From Diadema antillarum (Eukaryota): DNA of 64,000 bases. The notes under the pieces are model-generated. The model saw only the letters and a program-made list of their open reading frames with translations, did not search any database and was not told the origin of the DNA. The position numbers were made by a program, and so were the translations under genes. The DNA is taken from positions 496,001-560,000 of the forward strand of contig NW_027272389.1 of assembly GCF_040938485.1 (NCBI RefSeq), given 5' to 3'. Positions 35,315 through 49,962 of this stretch are shown one piece after another (position 1 is the stretch's first letter; each line of letters opens with the position of its first letter).

Positions 35315-35486
35315 CTAGTCCTGTATGAGCGAGTCCAAGGCTTCGGTGAACCTGAGAATGTCGATGAGCTTCAACAGTCCCAGGTCTTCTTTGATGCTGG
35401 TGTAGAAGAACTCGGGGGCTTCCTTCTTCAGCTTGTGAAGCCTGTAGAGGAGCCTTCCATTGTAGTCCACCATGGATCCACGCAAT
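35315..35486 (-). CDS. ARM-TIR-SAM-like protein, terminal exon
   Basis: CAG acceptor phase 2; LRGSMVDYNGRLLYRLHKLKKEAPEFFYTSIKEDLG...*; TAG at 35317-35315. Confidence 0.85.
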
Positions 35487-36119
35487 CTGTGCAATATTGC
35501 AATCAAGACGGGGGTAGGAATGAATTCACTTGGTAGAGCGGTCTTCTTCAGGCCAAAAACATCAAACAAGTCATCTTCAGATTTCTTGTGACATTTTGGT
35601 CAGCTCCTTTTTAGTAGCAGGCAGCTGAGGTGATGTATAGTCTCCTACTGTTGAAAACACTTTGAAACAAGATTGTACAAACTAATTTCTACTTTTATGA
35701 TCTAAATAATCTTTCAATTGAAATGCAACATGGAATTCATTCCTAAATGCAATGTTAAATTTGTGTCCAGTTTTTTCTGTAAAATTACAACCTACAGATC
35801 ATGAAACTTCATGAACCGAAACTCTTCCTTCCTTCAAAACTCTTTGAAGGAAAAAAATTTAACTTCAAAAGATCTTAAGTTAAATGCTGATATCTACGAT
35901 AAATGTGATTGTAAATGTTTCAAATGATCTGTCATCTTAGTGACCCGAACACCATTCGCTCCCCCCCCCAAAAAAAGATCTATTCCTAAACAGAAACATT
36001 ATGCTTATTTGCATCAATCACAGCCCACATTGGATGGTGTATGTATTCTGCTAAAATCAGTAATAAGGCATATTCCTTGCAACTAGCATAGTGCTATGGT
36101 CAAAAGTGAACTTGCTTAC

Positions 36120-36249
36120 ATGTCCAGCTCATTTTCTGCTAGCCAGTCTTGCACCTGACCAGCTGACCATTCCAGACAGGACGGTGCTGCCGACTTGCTG
36201 GCATCCTCCACCGAAAAAGTGATACTTCCGAGCGGTTTTCCTGGTGCAT
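36120..36249 (-). CDS. ARM-TIR-SAM-like protein, exon carrying the SAM-like start (LEWSAGQVQDWLAENEL)
   Basis: CAG acceptor phase 1; GTAAGC donor phase 2; open frame. Confidence 0.85.
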
Positions 36250-37210
36250 CTGATCACAAAACAAAAAGAGGATAACATGAAACCATTAAAACTGACATCG
36301 GGAAAAAACGACAAGCATGACTTCGTGGTGATTACAGTCAGGTTGTTATAAAATCATCTACTCTGACCCAGTGGCTATTGAAGGAAGCTAGCTTTATCAA
36401 ACTACCTAAACACAATTATTCTCCTTCCACTGATGCACAATACCCATTATTTTTGCAGTGTCATGCATGTACAACGTGAAAGACAAATATCAAAATAGGT
36501 CAGTAACAGAGGCATAACAAATGTTGCAAACAATTTGATATCAGTACTAATGAGATGAATGACATTGTACAAATGTGATAGATAAGATATACTTAAGTGA
36601 GCATTACAGCAATGATTATCGAATAAAAATGATGAAAACACCCACTGACGGAGATTTGAAGTCTTACATGTTTTGACTGATTTTGAACATCTTTATCATG
36701 CACAGTTATAATGACAATATATCAATTCACAAAGAACAGAACCAATGTTCATACATTCTTCTGATCTGCAAGAACTTCTGATTTAGCTTAGAGAGACATT
36801 CCAGATGATAAGTATGATTTTATATTATGAAGTACATATAATTTAATAGTGCCATGTATAGATAAGTGCAATTTTTGTTGATCCTTGAGTGGACAAACCA
36901 ATGACCTGAAATACCCAAGACATACACTGAACAAGGATGATCACATAGAGGCTCATGTTTCAGTAAATGTAGCCGTGTAATTCGTTTACAATTACCCCCC
37001 ATCTTTAACAATTTTTACCTGTGTAGAATGCAATGCATGCTTTCTTCTTTTGTTCTGCTTCCATGAGCATTCATTCACACATTCTTACGTTAAACTGCTA
37101 TGTCAATCATCCTCCTTCATTGTGATTTGTTATGAATCTTGAAAACATTTCTATTCCTCATCCCAATCAGTATAAATTCTTTAACTCTGTATAAAGTACA
37201 ACCAATTTAA

Positions 37211-37295
37211 TCCACTGAGGATGGACTGATTTTGCTTCAACAAGCATTTCCCACAGACATCTGCCCAAGTATACTCGCAACTCGTCCTTAATGGG
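37211..37295. mobile_element. Degenerate piggyBac-like mini-element
   Basis: TTAA flanks; imperfect TIRs tccactgaggatg / tcgtccttaatggg. Confidence 0.4.
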
Positions 37296-37344
37296 TTAAA
37301 GATGTTCAAATACAAACATCCTAAAATCATCCTGAGGTCTTACT

Positions 37345-37500
37345 TCAAACAAATGTGAACACTGTTACAGTTGGGGACTTCCTAATTTCTAATGGTAAGT
37401 TATTCCACAATTTGGGGCTGCACAGGAAAATGCTTGTTCTCCTGAAGTAATGCTTTGCCTGTTAGGATTTGCAAAAAAAGAGAGTATCTTTAGAATTATA
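37345..37500 (-). mobile_element. L2 LINE ORF2 3' fragment
   Basis: SGEQAFSCAAP(fs)LWNNLPLEIRKSP matches the L2 'GxRAFSxAAPxLWNxLP' motif. Confidence 0.6.
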
Positions 37501-37590
37501 CAGGTTATGAGTGTGCTTGCAAGATTGGAATAACTGTAGTAATATAGTATACAAATAATGACTGCTATAGGCACACAGTTAAAACAAGGA

Positions 37591-46734: not shown

Positions 46735-47082
46735 GAAATGCTTTACAAGTCAATTACCCCGTTGATTACTCCAGAGTATACTCGGCAGGTGTCTATGGGA
46801 AATGCATGTTGTAGCAAAATTAGTACATCCTTGATGGGCCAACAGATCCAAGTGTCTGGGCACAAAAAGGGTTTAAGTAATGAATCATACTCAGAAAATG
46901 TAAATCACTCATATCAAGTATTATGTTGGAGATGTACTCAGAAAAGGCTGCTGTCATTACTACACAGAGAGAGTGCCATAAAGTGAAAGCTTTCATTGAA
47001 CAATCCATATAATTGTGACAGTGAAACACGAGTCTATCGATGTAATAGTGGTAGGCACAATACAAGGTTCTCAGACAATTAG

Positions 47083-47776
47083 CTGTATACGCTGTTATTT
47101 TCGCGAGGGTTTTATTTTCATAAATTTCGCGAGCTTTGGGCTGATCACGAAATTTAAGACACATGAAAATATTAACCCGTCATACCTTATGTACAAATTG
47201 ATGACAAAATGCATCCAACGCTGGCCGGACCAGAACACGGCTGTTACACCAGCCAGTACTTACACAAACTATTACTAGTATGCTACGGTTGGTGCGACCG
47301 ATTCTGGAAGTGCAGTACGATGATAAACATGCATTAAAATGTGCAATCTCCACGCATGCTACGTTACCCAACGCGAACGAACACCGGCTCGACGTGGTTG
47401 GGTGAGGCCTAGGGATGCATGTAAAACGTTTGCTAGCGCTAGCGCAGCTCTGAAACTTTGTAGTCTACGTCTATTTGTTGCAACATTTGGTAGGTACTTG
47501 TGAATGCCGTGTGTGAGTGTCTTACTGCAAGTTCCTGTAATTATTGTTTCATTTTATCAATCTTCTACTGTGTCTTTTCTATTGTCATTTTTGGGAAGTC
47601 ACAATGCAAATGGAAAAACGCTACAAGTATGTTGGCAAGTGTTTGAATGTGTTTCTCGGGCTTGGCAGTAGACCCTACTACTATTAGTATCAATCGCGAA
47701 TTTAACAACACGCGAAAATGCCACCGATACCGTGATTCGCGAAAATATCTGAACGCGAAAATATTGGCGTATACAG
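47083..47776. mobile_element. Probable CTGTA-type non-autonomous DNA element
   Basis: ctgtatacgctgttattttcgcg / cgcgaaaatattggcgtatacag|ta; left TA absent. Confidence 0.45.
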
Positions 47777-48057
47777 TACTCCATACCCTCCCTCTGACCC
47801 TAAATGTAATGATAAAGTTAATCCTAACCCTAATTCAAATTCTAACCCTTAACATAGCCCTAACCCTAATCTTTACTCTAACCTCATCACTAACCTGTAT
47901 TTAGATGGGGTGGGTATTGCCATGATGTGCAATACAATCTTGTCAAAGATACTATCCTTACAAAGACGAGAACTGAGCACTTGTATTACTGACAACTGAC
48001 AAACCCACTTGCGTCAATGATAAACCCTCTGTCTCTGTGTGTGGATCAGGGCCTCTG

Positions 48058-48510
48058 ATACCCCATTTATACTGCGAGTGGGTTTCAGAGCCTCCTCGAG
48101 GAGGTTCGAAAGCCCACTCTGAAAGAACAGCCTCTTGTCTGTTTATACTGCTCGCCAAAAGCAGACCCTAGAGAGCAGGCCCAACCGGCTAATACAAATC
48201 CCCTCTGATGCATGATGCAAGTGCAAGCTGAAAGGCTTTCTTAAGCAGGGATTGGTCGAGACCACTGGGTTGTTTATGTAAGCCGGCGATAAACCTTCCG
48301 CGATAACTTCCGGGTCTGCTAAAAAGCAGCTTCTCGAACCCCTTAGCATTTACACTGCTTCAGAGGCTGCTATAGCAGGCTCTGAAACCACCCCTAGTAG
48401 GTAGTTTCAGAACCTGACCTGATCTGATCTAATTTTCTCTGTTTATACTGAGCTGAAAGGCTGCTATAGGAGGCTTCAGAACCCCCTATTTGCTTAGTAT
48501 AAACGGAGTG
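48058..48510. mobile_element. Possible degenerate MITE abutting a splice donor
   Basis: ccatttatactg / agtataaacggag imperfect TIRs; internal gtttatactg repeats. Confidence 0.35.
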
Positions 48511-48518
48511 TGACTTAC

Positions 48519-48652
48519 TTTCTTCTTGTTGTTGTCATGTACAGCCAGCCTGGCGAGCCCTGCAGCTACCTCCGTGTCTGACAGACCCTGACATCTCTTG
48601 TCCTTGGCGCCCTGTGCCTCCTTCAGAATCTCCACCAGGTATTCTATGGTGT
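48519..48652 (-). CDS. ARM-TIR-SAM-like protein, ARM exon (TIEYLVEILKEA...GLARLAVHDNNKKK)
   Basis: CAG acceptor phase 1; AAA|GTAAGT donor phase 0. Confidence 0.88.
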
Positions 48653-49751
48653 CTGCAAATTAAAAAAGAAAACCAAAGAACATGAAAAGAAATTCAATAA
48701 CCATAAAATTCACGCAACTTGTGTTGAAAATGTTCAACTCAAGAACTAGAGCGAAAATAACAGCAATCAAATATTTTTGATCGTTACATAGACTACAATG
48801 TAATGAATTGATTCTGCAAAATCAAAAACACACAAAGCTTATCTTACTCAGCAGAGCAGTAAGAATTACTCATGTGAAATATCCACTTCTACAGTACATC
48901 ATTTTCCTGTGTTATTGGACTTTCTTTTGGAACAAGTAAAATCAATGGTTGCCCAAGTGTTCTGCAACAGTTCAAAAATGCGCTTGCCCAACCAAGGAGG
49001 GGGAAATAAATTTATATATCACCCTGTATTACCCCTGATGTTTTTCCTCTATGTTCTTGTTTGTTTGGCTTGCCTTCACAAATCAGGACGGTCCAGAAGA
49101 ATGGTGTGAACAAGATGCTGTGACACTGACAGCATGCACTGACCACTGGATGGTCATTAATATTCATGAACATGTCCTCGGACCCCAATGAGGAAGAGGA
49201 CCATCGTAGGGGCGTCAGCAGAGCAGTGAGTGTCAGGAGCTAGAGTGGCACTCTTCCGACATTAATCGTACCCTAATGATACCCATCAAGCTGGGGCATA
49301 AAATGGGTAGGCCAGTGATTCAAATGACTTATGCAACTTCAATGAGTTTATGTAGCAGGTGATCGCCCAAGAAAAAGGTCTGTTGTAGTGGCATATACTG
49401 TGGATTAGCACTCTTCCTGCTCCGCAATGGTGAGATTCTTGAAACAGGGAACGGTTTGTGCATTAAGTTGAAAGCCATACGGACATTAAGACTGATATCC
49501 CTCTATTCAGAGCCTGTCTCAATGCCATAACACCCAAAATTATTTTTACACCCAAAATCACTTTTACACCCAAAATCATCTTTACACCTTTTAATTTTTT
49601 TTAAGCATTTATACTACTTCATTTTGAAACAGGATCACAGATACTTGTGGCCGAATAGGTTTTGTTTTTTTGTTTGTTTGTTTGATTTTTTTTTTTGTGA
49701 AAGCATATTATGCTAACTGAGGTAAGAAACTTCCTTGTTTACTGTACTTAC

Positions 49752-49962
49752 TTGTTCCTTTCTCGGCGAGGATCTCCTCCTGGCCTTCCTCCACAATGTA
49801 GGCCAGTGTCATCATGCCAATGGCCTTGAGGTAGGGGTCATCCTCGAGGAACGGCTCCATCTTCTCCGCCACATGCTCCTCCCGGTACAGGTGCCGGTTA
49901 CCGGGGGCTTTGGCCAGGTTGTGGAGGATGTTCAGGGAAGCTTTGATCAGGAATTGAATGTT
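49752..49962 (-). CDS. ARM-TIR-SAM-like protein, most 5' identified exon (SLNILHNLAK...GMMTLAYIV)
   Basis: CAG acceptor phase 0; A|GTAAGT donor phase 1; GC-rich coding composition. Confidence 0.85.

What the first reader, a model, noticed from the sequence alone, without database searches (positions are those of the whole stretch)
35315..49962. SARM1-like parts in a different order: ARM-TIR-SAM with an intact catalytic-type Glu
Eight exons splice in frame (1377 nt, 458 aa) to give ARM repeats, then TIR (HIMISY...WID...SPNCRTEAEYA), then a SAM-like helical domain. SARM1 is ARM-SAM-SAM-TIR. The CxxE glutamate equivalent to the TIR NADase catalytic residue is present, and its codon is split by the 39944-39010 intron. 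This is a candidate ARM-regulated, oligomerising NAD+ hydrolase or immune effector; activity is inference. Similar invertebrate ARM-TIR proteins probably exist in databases but are little characterised.
Basis: partly seen in the sequence, partly recalled or inferred. Interest (0 to 1): 0.75.

Follow-up and report, generated by a model that had tools for sequence, protein, structure and literature searches.

The report
Sea-urchin ARM–TIR–SAM gene, already catalogued
The stretch holds the last eight of ten exons of a real sea-urchin gene for a protein with armadillo repeats, a TIR domain and a SAM domain; it belongs to an old, widespread animal family that is already in the databases, and nobody yet knows whether it destroys NAD+.

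Summary
Eight minus-strand exons (49962-35315, 1377 nt) splice in frame. Their 458-aa product is identical to residues 143-600 of an NCBI protein, 'uncharacterized protein [Diadema antillarum]' (600 aa).

The domain order is canonical armadillo repeats, then a TIR_2-type TIR, then one C-terminal SAM. The predicted SAM fold is closest to SARM1 SAM1 (Z 9.8). The CxxE glutamate (E428) is kept in 47 of 48 relatives. It aligns with the catalytic Glu of RPS4, Cat1 and C. elegans TIR-1. Its codon is split by intron 39944-39010, and that intron position is shared with amphioxus, lamprey and a bivalve.

The family is ancient and wide: corals, molluscs, annelids, echinoderms, amphioxus, lamprey, gar, eel and lungfish. 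It is already listed as 'ARM-TIR'.

A 2026 preprint tested isolated TIR domains of three animal members (amphioxus, gar, ascidian) and one algal relative. It recorded no cADPR isomers and no NAD+ depletion, but the known plant NADases RUN1, RPS4 and RPP1 also read blank in that assay.

NADase activity therefore remains inference, at about even odds. This is an ordinary member of a known but uncharacterised family. Interest is modest.

The parts
49752..49962 (-). Exon 3 of 10 (first exon inside the window); armadillo-repeat region, P0153 aa 143-213
   Evidence: Acceptor ...cacag| and donor |gtaagt. Identical to P0153.
48519..48652 (-). Exon 4; armadillo-repeat region
43667..43934 (-). Exon 5; last armadillo repeats and the start of the charged linker
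   Evidence: Pfam Arm PF00514, E 7.2e-10, 39 bits against a cut-off of 20.6..
41641..41741 (-). Exon 6; linker, then TIR strand A and helix A (HIMISYQW)
   Evidence: The TIR starts at about 41712.
39945..40086 (-). Exon 7; TIR BB-loop region (VWIDVDCMYGSTL) up to SPNCRT, plus the first base (G, 39945) of the Glu428 codon
   Evidence: Pfam TIR_2, E 1.4e-7..
39010..39944 (-). Phase-1 intron that splits the Glu428 codon; its position is conserved in Bilateria
   Evidence: gtaggt...cacag borders. Exon borders fall at the same Glu in amphioxus, lamprey and the bivalve Solemya. The Porites gene is intronless.
38791..39009 (-). Exon 8; the last two bases of the Glu428 codon (AG, 39009-39008), the C-terminal half of the TIR (to about 38822), and the start of a disordered linker
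   Evidence: Pfam TIR_2 positions 65-122.. In the AlphaFold model the linker has pLDDT below 50.
36120..36249 (-). Exon 9; linker and SAM helix 1 (the SAM starts at about 36169, LEWSAGQVQDWL)
35315..35486 (-). Exon 10; SAM helices 2-5 and the stop codon TAG (35317-35315)
   Evidence: The acceptor cacag|A at 35486 is supported by all homologues. SAM fold.

Best explanation
Shown: this is the 3' three-quarters of a 10-exon, roughly 50.6-kb gene of the sea urchin Diadema antillarum. The gene encodes a 600-aa protein with no hydrophobic N-terminus. The protein has a canonical armadillo solenoid (about aa 30-335), a short charged linker, a TIR_2-type TIR domain (about aa 357-490), a disordered linker of about 35 aa, and one C-terminal SAM domain (aa 528-600). 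It is most similar to S. purpuratus LOC100892829 (67% identity), its likely orthologue. It belongs to an ancient ARM-TIR(-SAM) family.

Inferred mechanism: the SAM domain drives self-association and so brings TIR domains together. The armadillo solenoid binds a partner or ligand and gates this assembly. The assembled TIRs use Glu428 on helix C to cleave NAD+, either to make an ADPR-type signal or to deplete NAD+, in innate immune or stress signalling. On this reading the enzyme works only as a full-length oligomer, which would explain why isolated TIR domains of family members looked inactive.
For: Gene and domains:
- The spliced product is identical to P0153.
- The 5' exons, with ATG and splice sites, were found.
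- Pfam gives Arm and TIR_2.
- The AlphaFold model has pLDDT 87 for TIR plus SAM and 93 for SAM alone.
- TIR fold: Z 17.9 to Hydra TRR-2 and Z 16.4 to the SARM1 TIR.
- SAM fold: Z 9.8 to SARM1 SAM1.

Constraint:
- The family runs from corals to lungfish.
- The TIR is 38-71% identical to ours across 46 members.
- S12, Y13, W36, D38, C74, E77 and the G101-W102-L103-G104 motif (TIR-slice numbering) are invariant. E428 is kept in 47 of 48.

Catalytic-type Glu:
- It aligns with the Glu of RPS4 (VRE), Cat1 (WDE) and TIR-1 (HKE).
- In orthologues P0056 and P0156 the same Glu lies 0.95 and 0.53 A from ThsB E85.
- The BB-loop stretch IDVD.MYG resembles TIR-1's IDVDKLYAG.

Active relatives:
- Related TIRs that carry the same S..C..E..YA motif without a Trp are active in the preprint: coelacanth (NAD+ depletion), herring, a rotifer and an oyster 639-aa protein (cADPR).
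Against: - Isolated TIR domains from this same TIR cluster (40% identity or more) have a blank 'Active' column in Table S4 of Hurieva et al. 2026. No cADPR, 2'cADPR, 3'cADPR or NAD+ depletion was recorded. The four tested were amphioxus A0A8J9W3M3 (which is P0171, with a TIR 62% identical to ours), gar, the ascidian Phallusia, and a Chlamydomonas relative.
- The Trp that precedes the Glu in SARM1 (W638, from my own knowledge) and in plant WCxxE is an Asn here.
- A Glu at this position does not by itself make an enzyme. TLR2, IL-1R9 and IL-1R10 have it and were inactive.
- No expression or splice evidence from reads could be obtained.
- No assay of any full-length family member is known to me.
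Confidence: 0.45

Rival explanations
1. It is a non-catalytic adaptor. The TIR is a scaffold for TIR-TIR assemblies downstream of the large sea-urchin Toll-like receptor repertoire or other sensors. The armadillo solenoid recruits partners and the SAM multimerises the complex. The conserved Glu and its surrounding motif would then be an interface, not an active site.
For: All four isolated TIRs tested from this cluster were inactive. The immunology literature files ARM-TIR proteins as putative TLR adaptors. Canonical ARM repeats of beta-catenin/Vac8 type are typical protein-binding modules. Some TIRs that carry the Glu are inactive.
Against: The known NADases RUN1, RPS4 and RPP1 were also blank in the same assay, so a blank is weak evidence. 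By sequence profile the TIR hits enzymatic or bacterial-type TIRs (Cat1, RPS4, TIR-1, SARM1) and no TLR or MyD88 chain at E up to 0.01. The near-invariance of the Glu over more than 600 million years fits catalysis.
Confidence: 0.4
2. It is a rearranged SARM1 paralogue. The family and SARM1 would descend from one ancestral ARM/SAM/TIR gene by domain shuffling, and the protein would keep SARM1's NMN/NAD+-sensing autoinhibition.
For: The SAM is structurally closest to SARM1 SAM1 (Z 9.8, 29% identity) and to TIR-1 (Z 8.7). The BB-loop stretch resembles TIR-1. The SARM1 TIR is among the top structural matches (Z 16.4).
Against: SAM rows within 1-1.5 Z of the top (DGK-delta, CNK2, liprin) are effectively tied. 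The ARM profile retrieves Vac8, beta-catenin and ODAD2 at E 1e-36 to 1e-22, and no SARM1 chain is in the best 60. The TIR profile scores Cat1 and RPS4 better than SARM1. The preprint puts SARM1 in a different TIR cluster. There is one SAM rather than a tandem, and the SARM1 insertion before the Glu is absent.
Confidence: 0.1
3. It is a mis-annotated or dead gene: a chance chain of open frames or an unexpressed pseudogene.
For: No RNA run could be listed and no reads could be laid.
Against: All ten exons are open with canonical splice sites. The product aligns end to end with homologues from many phyla (E down to 1e-231). A second haplotype copy on contig C600 is 97% identical in the TIR exon and open. 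Intron positions are conserved.
Confidence: 0.03

Closest known systems
ARM-TIR proteins of invertebrate immune-gene catalogues (Zhang et al. 2015, PMC4346834; Aplysia immunome, PMC9334734), and TIR cluster A0A0B7AZE4_1 of Hurieva et al. 2026 (bioRxiv 10.64898/2026.04.20.719644)
   Same: Same architecture: an armadillo solenoid followed by a TIR_2-type TIR with the helix-C Glu. Aplysia LOC101845869 (P0223), Acanthaster A0A8B7XU85 (P0056), Holothuria A0A9Q1C056 (P0156) and B. lanceolatum A0A8J9W3M3 (P0171) are direct homologues of this gene.
   Different: Nothing essential differs; this is the Diadema member. The C-terminal SAM is rarely annotated in those lists because it scores below Pfam's thresholds.
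SARM1 / C. elegans TIR-1 (ARM-SAM-SAM-TIR NAD+ hydrolase)
   Same: The same three domain types occur in one cytosolic protein. The SAM is closest in fold to SARM1 SAM1. The Glu aligns with the TIR-1 catalytic Glu. The BB-loop stretch IDVD..Y.G is similar.
   Different: The order is ARM-TIR-SAM. There is a single SAM, not the tandem that forms the octamer ring. The ARM is of the ordinary beta-catenin/Vac8 type. Four residues, including the equivalent of SARM1 W638, are missing before the Glu. No NADase activity has been shown.
Related TIRs shown active in the 2026 preprint: coelacanth H2ZXV5 (NAD+ depletion), herring A0A6P8EVF3, rotifer A0A814VN55, and oyster A0A8W8J0Z4 (639 aa, cADPR)
   Same: They share the motifs HIM(I/L)SY, VW.D, S..C..E..YA, IP(I/L) and WL(G/A), read against the P0153 sequence. 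The Glu is needed for their activity.
   Different: They fall in different TIR clusters, below 40% identity to this family. The two fish proteins, at 296 and 236 aa with the TIR at the N-terminus, are too short to carry an ARM solenoid.

Membership tests
TIR domain (Pfam TIR_2, PF13676) | Profile match above the curated cut-off, and the flavodoxin-like TIR fold | tested here: met
   Exon 7 alone scores 32.4 bits against a cut-off of 28. Full-length homologues give E 1e-21 to 1e-24. PF13676 is precomputed for P0153. The model matches solved TIRs at Z 14-18 and by Foldseek at E 1e-6 to 1e-4.
Catalytic (NAD+-cleaving) TIR | Glutamate on helix C at the catalytic position | tested here: met
   E428 aligns with the Glu of RPS4, Cat1 and TIR-1. 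It is kept in 47 of 48 relatives. In orthologues the same Glu lies within 1 A of ThsB E85. I could not superpose my own model on SARM1 E642.
Catalytic (NAD+-cleaving) TIR | Measured Glu-dependent NAD+ turnover | not testable with these tools
   There is no assay here. In the literature, isolated TIRs of amphioxus, gar and ascidian family members and a Chlamydomonas relative were recorded as inactive, but so were the controls RUN1, RPS4 and RPP1.
SARM1 family | Domain order ARM-SAM-SAM-TIR with a tandem SAM | tested here: not met
   The order is ARM-TIR-SAM with one SAM.
SARM1 family | SARM1-type ARM domain (the allosteric NMN/NAD+ sensor) | tested here: not met
   The ARM profile retrieves Vac8, beta-catenin, ODAD2 and designed ARM proteins. 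No SARM1 chain is among the best 60 of 177 hits. The binding pocket itself was not examined.
SARM1 family | TIR specifically related to the SARM1 TIR | tested here: inconclusive
   Profile E-values are 2e-4 for TIR-1 and 6e-3 for SARM1, against 2e-8 for Cat1 and 1.4e-4 for RPS4. Structural Z is 16.4 for SARM1, within 1.5 Z of Hydra TRR-2 (17.9) and tied with IL-1RAcPb and MyD88. No tree was built.
SAM domain | Five-helix SAM bundle | tested here: met
   The AlphaFold model has pLDDT 93.4. All the top rows of the wide structural search (at least the first 30) are SAM domains, led by SARM1 SAM1 at Z 9.8 and rmsd 1.6 A over 63 residues. Foldseek gives TM 0.70. The profile hits Shank2, SARM1, ETV6 and SMS1 SAMs at E 1e-4 to 1e-3.
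SAM domain | Pfam SAM_1/SAM_2 match above the curated cut-off | tested here: not met
   Homologues give only sub-threshold matches to the first half of the profile, 16-19 bits against cut-offs of 20.5-23. The window's exons give no match.
Armadillo repeat | Pfam Arm match above the cut-off, and similarity to solved ARM solenoids | tested here: met
   Arm scores 39 bits against a cut-off of 20.6. The profile hits Vac8 at E 2.9e-36 and beta-catenin at E 1.8e-22.

The most novel reading that the evidence does not exclude
The ARM-TIR-SAM family would be a second lineage of gated NAD+-processing enzymes in animals, independent of SARM1. It would be switched on by SAM-driven polymerisation and controlled by its armadillo solenoid. 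It would be active only as a full-length oligomer, which would explain the blank results for isolated TIR domains. Among the listed relatives it is kept from corals to lungfish, and no tetrapod, insect or nematode member was listed.
Probability: 0.3. Interest if true: 0.7.

Novelty: new member of a known kind. Interest (0 to 1): 0.3.

Why it matters
If the family proves to be a regulated NAD+-cleaving enzyme, it would show that animals kept more than one ARM-gated, SAM-assembled TIR enzyme. It would also give a SARM1-like switch with a simpler layout (one SAM, ARM directly before TIR) for study, and a function for a conserved gene that none of the tetrapod, insect or nematode proteomes among the listed relatives carries. 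As it stands, the finding only re-identifies an annotated, catalogued, uncharacterised gene. The practical gains are small. The gene extends 5' beyond the window. The C-terminal domain is firmly a SAM. The intron that splits the Glu codon is shared by deuterostomes and a bivalve, so it is probably old in Bilateria.

Tried and rejected
- My first gene model used the last-exon acceptor at 35528 and gave 472 aa. It adds 14 residues that every homologue lacks, so I rejected it for the acceptor at 35486.
- Read evidence failed. No RNA run was listed for the 5.1-kb stretch or for exon 5.
- Complex prediction with two copies of the SAM domain returned 'no answer' (score 0.02). This is no evidence either way.
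- The Atlas search of the last exon gave only a weak SAM lead at 0.75. The Atlas search of the TIR gave generic TIR_2 and ThsB clusters.
- The key catalogue of TIR families, Gerdol et al. 2017, is not held, so I could not say which 'ecTIR-DC' family this is.
- The supplements of the TIR atlas preprint (PMC13142454) did not contain the sea-urchin accession.
- The look-up of encoding contigs had no record for the Mya and Acropora proteins.
- I did not build a SARM1-rooted tree.
- I did not superpose my model on SARM1 residue by residue, because model coordinates are not exposed.

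
Full report
**What is there**

The window is eukaryotic DNA of about 39% G+C. It corresponds to G000:C1501:496001-560000 of a 1.75-Gb assembly.

On the minus strand, eight open blocks between 49962 and 35315 have canonical acceptor and donor sites. The exons are 49962-49752, 48652-48519, 43934-43667, 41741-41641, 40086-39945, 39009-38791, 36249-36120 and 35486-35315. Joined, they give 1377 nt, which is 458 codons plus TAG.

The product is identical, residue for residue, to positions 143-600 of P0153, which NCBI and UniRef name 'uncharacterized protein [Diadema antillarum]'.

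My own first model took an upstream acceptor for the last exon (35528). It inserted 14 residues that no homologue has.

**The gene is longer than the finding**

Residues 1-142 of P0153 have no match in the window. They are encoded by two further exons at C1501:581881-581669 (starting at ATG) and 571238-571026. Both have proper splice sites and phases that join onto the exon at 49962.

A second copy on contig C600 is 97% identical in the TIR exon and 96-99% in the two 5' exons. It is most likely the other haplotype.

**Domains**

- Pfam finds Arm (E 7e-10, above the cut-off) in exon 5 and TIR_2 in exons 7 and 8.
- Full-length relatives give TIR_2 at E 1e-21 to 1e-24, Arm, and only sub-threshold hits to the first half of SAM_1, SAM_2 or SAM_3.
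- A profile of the N-terminal 300 residues retrieves Vac8 (E 3e-36), beta-catenin (2e-22) and ODAD2/ARMC4. No SARM1 chain is among the best 60. The solenoid is therefore an ordinary armadillo domain.
- AlphaFold2 on residues 352-600 with 45 homologues gives mean pLDDT 86.8. It shows a confident TIR, a disordered linker (model residues 146-168) and a confident helical C-terminal domain.
- The TIR matches solved TIRs. By Foldseek the matches are SPARTA TIR-APAZ, RPS4, MyD88 and SARM1. By the wide aligner they are Z 17.9 for Hydra TRR-2, Z 16.4 for the SARM1 TIR (rmsd 2.0 A over 125 residues), Z 16.3 for IL-1RAcPb and Z 16.1 for MyD88.
- The C-terminal 73 residues folded alone give pLDDT 93.4.
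- Its best Foldseek matches are the SARM1 SAM1-2 crystal structures (TM 0.70, rmsd 2.2 A, 26% identity).
- In the wide search the top row is human SARM1 residues 412-476 (SAM1) at Z 9.8, rmsd 1.6 A over 63 residues and 29% identity. C. elegans TIR-1 follows at Z 8.7, then DGK-delta, CNK2, liprin and at least 25 further SAM domains.
- A sequence profile of this domain also hits Shank2, SARM1 SAM1, ETV6 and SMS1 SAMs at E 1e-4 to 1e-3.

The C-terminus is a SAM. SARM1 SAM1 is its nearest solved neighbour, though only about one Z unit ahead of other SAMs.

**The glutamate**

In P0153 numbering the CxxE Glu is E428, in the motif SPNCRTEAEY. Its codon is G at 39945 plus AG at 39009-39008, split by a phase-1 intron at 39944-39010.

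Across 48 family members the Glu is present in 47. The exception has a six-residue gap at this spot, which looks like a model error.

The family TIR profile was aligned to solved chains. It places this Glu on the Glu of RPS4 (VRE), of Cat1 (WDE) and of C. elegans TIR-1 (HKE, the counterpart of human E642). No TLR or MyD88 chain reaches E 0.01.

Hurieva et al. 2026 structurally aligned about 16,000 eukaryotic TIRs to ThsB E85. Their table lists GLU 388 for Acanthaster A0A8B7XU85 and GLU 527 for Holothuria A0A9Q1C056, at C-alpha distances of 0.95 and 0.53 A. I checked that these are the same NCRTE Glu in P0056 and P0156. I could not superpose my own model.

The stretch before the Glu is four residues shorter than in SARM1, and Asn stands where plant TIRs and Cat1 have Trp. 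Related TIRs that are active in the preprint also lack that Trp, so this is not disqualifying.

**The family**

Relatives of 560-750 aa with the same end-to-end alignment occur in:
- sea urchins, sea stars, sea cucumbers and crinoids;
- hemichordates, amphioxus and an ascidian;
- lamprey, gar, eel, tarpon, arapaima and lungfish;
- many molluscs, annelids, a brachiopod and nemerteans;
- corals and Nematostella.

E-values run down to 1e-295, and almost all are named 'uncharacterized'. No tetrapod, insect or nematode member was among the rows listed.

The closest relative is S. purpuratus LOC100892829, at 67% identity. A second echinoid paralogue group (LOC100890026) is about 50% identical. In Diadema that second group found only this gene as its best match. 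A more distant TIR-plus-SAM locus sits on C591/C962.

The intron at the Glu codon is at the same place in amphioxus, lamprey and the bivalve Solemya. The Porites gene has no introns.

**What the literature already holds**

'ARM-TIR' is a named class in the oyster immune-gene survey (PMC4346834). It is also in the Aplysia immunome, whose list includes LOC101845869, a direct homologue found here as P0223. Gerdol et al. 2017, which classifies conserved TIR families, is not held.

The most relevant paper is the 2026 preprint of Hurieva et al. (bioRxiv 10.64898/2026.04.20.719644). Its TIR cluster A0A0B7AZE4_1 groups TIRs at 40% identity or more. It contains this family together with armadillo-TIR proteins of green algae.

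Four isolated TIR domains of that cluster were expressed in E. coli:
- Chlamydomonas A0A2K3E7X5;
- Branchiostoma lanceolatum A0A8J9W3M3;
- gar W5N735;
- Phallusia A0A6F9DHT8.

For all four the 'Active' column and the product columns are blank. The amphioxus one is P0171 of my alignment, and its TIR is 62% identical to the Diadema TIR.

The same table leaves the known plant NADases RUN1, RPS4 and RPP1 blank, so a blank is weak evidence.

Neighbouring clusters with the same sequence style were active in a Glu-dependent way. Coelacanth H2ZXV5 depleted NAD+. Herring, a rotifer and a 639-aa oyster protein made cADPR. The preprint also notes that TLR2, IL-1R9 and IL-1R10 carry the Glu yet were inactive.

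**Interpretation**

The gene, its product, the ARM-TIR-SAM order, the catalytic-position Glu and the split codon are all shown.

The following points are inferred:
- that the SAM oligomerises the protein;
- that the armadillo domain gates it;
- that the TIR cleaves NAD+.

I put about 0.45 on a regulated, oligomer-dependent NAD+-processing enzyme. I put about 0.40 on a non-catalytic adaptor. I put about 0.10 on a true shuffled SARM1 relative that keeps SARM1-like metabolite sensing.

'SARM1-like parts in a different order' is fair for the SAM, fair but unspecific for the TIR, and not supported for the ARM.

**Limits**

No transcript evidence could be obtained. No RNA run was listed.

The complex prediction for the SAM gave no answer. 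No N stretch was touched, and nothing looked human.

**Verdict**

This is a correct reading of a real gene. The gene is annotated, belongs to a catalogued and widely conserved family, and has had family members sampled experimentally without activity. Interest is modest. Novelty: a member of a known kind.

Noticed in passing
window 56956-58379 and 62577-64000: Two direct repeats of at least 1.4 kb, 5621 bp apart and about 99-100% identical. The right copy runs off the window end. They look like the long terminal repeats of a young retroelement that sits inside intron 2 of this gene. The element would then be larger than the 59462-62547 span noted earlier.
   Followed up: partly
G000:C600:60560-113473 (outside the window): A second copy of the whole gene, 96-99% identical at protein level in the exons checked, with all checked frames open. 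It is probably the alternative haplotype in the assembly.
   Followed up: partly
G000:C591:554687-560699 and C962:772603-778603: A more distant locus, again as a pair of near-identical contigs, with TIR exons about 45% identical and a SAM-like last exon 34% identical to the S. purpuratus family member (P0011) used as the query. It is probably a second ARM-TIR-SAM gene of Diadema.
   Followed up: no
L004:1001-3043 (Porites lutea contig): The coral family member (680 aa) is encoded by one uninterrupted exon, whereas bilaterian members have 10-14 exons.
   Followed up: partly
P0205 (Nematostella vectensis, 1310 aa); P0206-P0208 (about 1160-1200 aa): These proteins are about twice the usual length and score E 1e-285 to 1e-295 against the family profile. 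They may be tandem fusions of two ARM-TIR units, or may carry extra domains.
   Followed up: no
Table S2/S4 of bioRxiv 10.64898/2026.04.20.719644: Green algae (Chlamydomonas, Gonium, Micromonas) have armadillo/TPR-clan plus TIR proteins whose TIR falls in the same 40%-identity cluster as this animal family. Either the architecture is older than animals, or it moved between eukaryotes.
   Followed up: no
window 39905-39927: A run of 23 G on the coding strand lies in the intron about 20 bases after the exon-7 donor.
   Followed up: no
The surrounding intron is low-complexity, A/C-rich repeat that reads as K, N, Q and T runs in translation. Nothing further was done with them.
   Followed up: no
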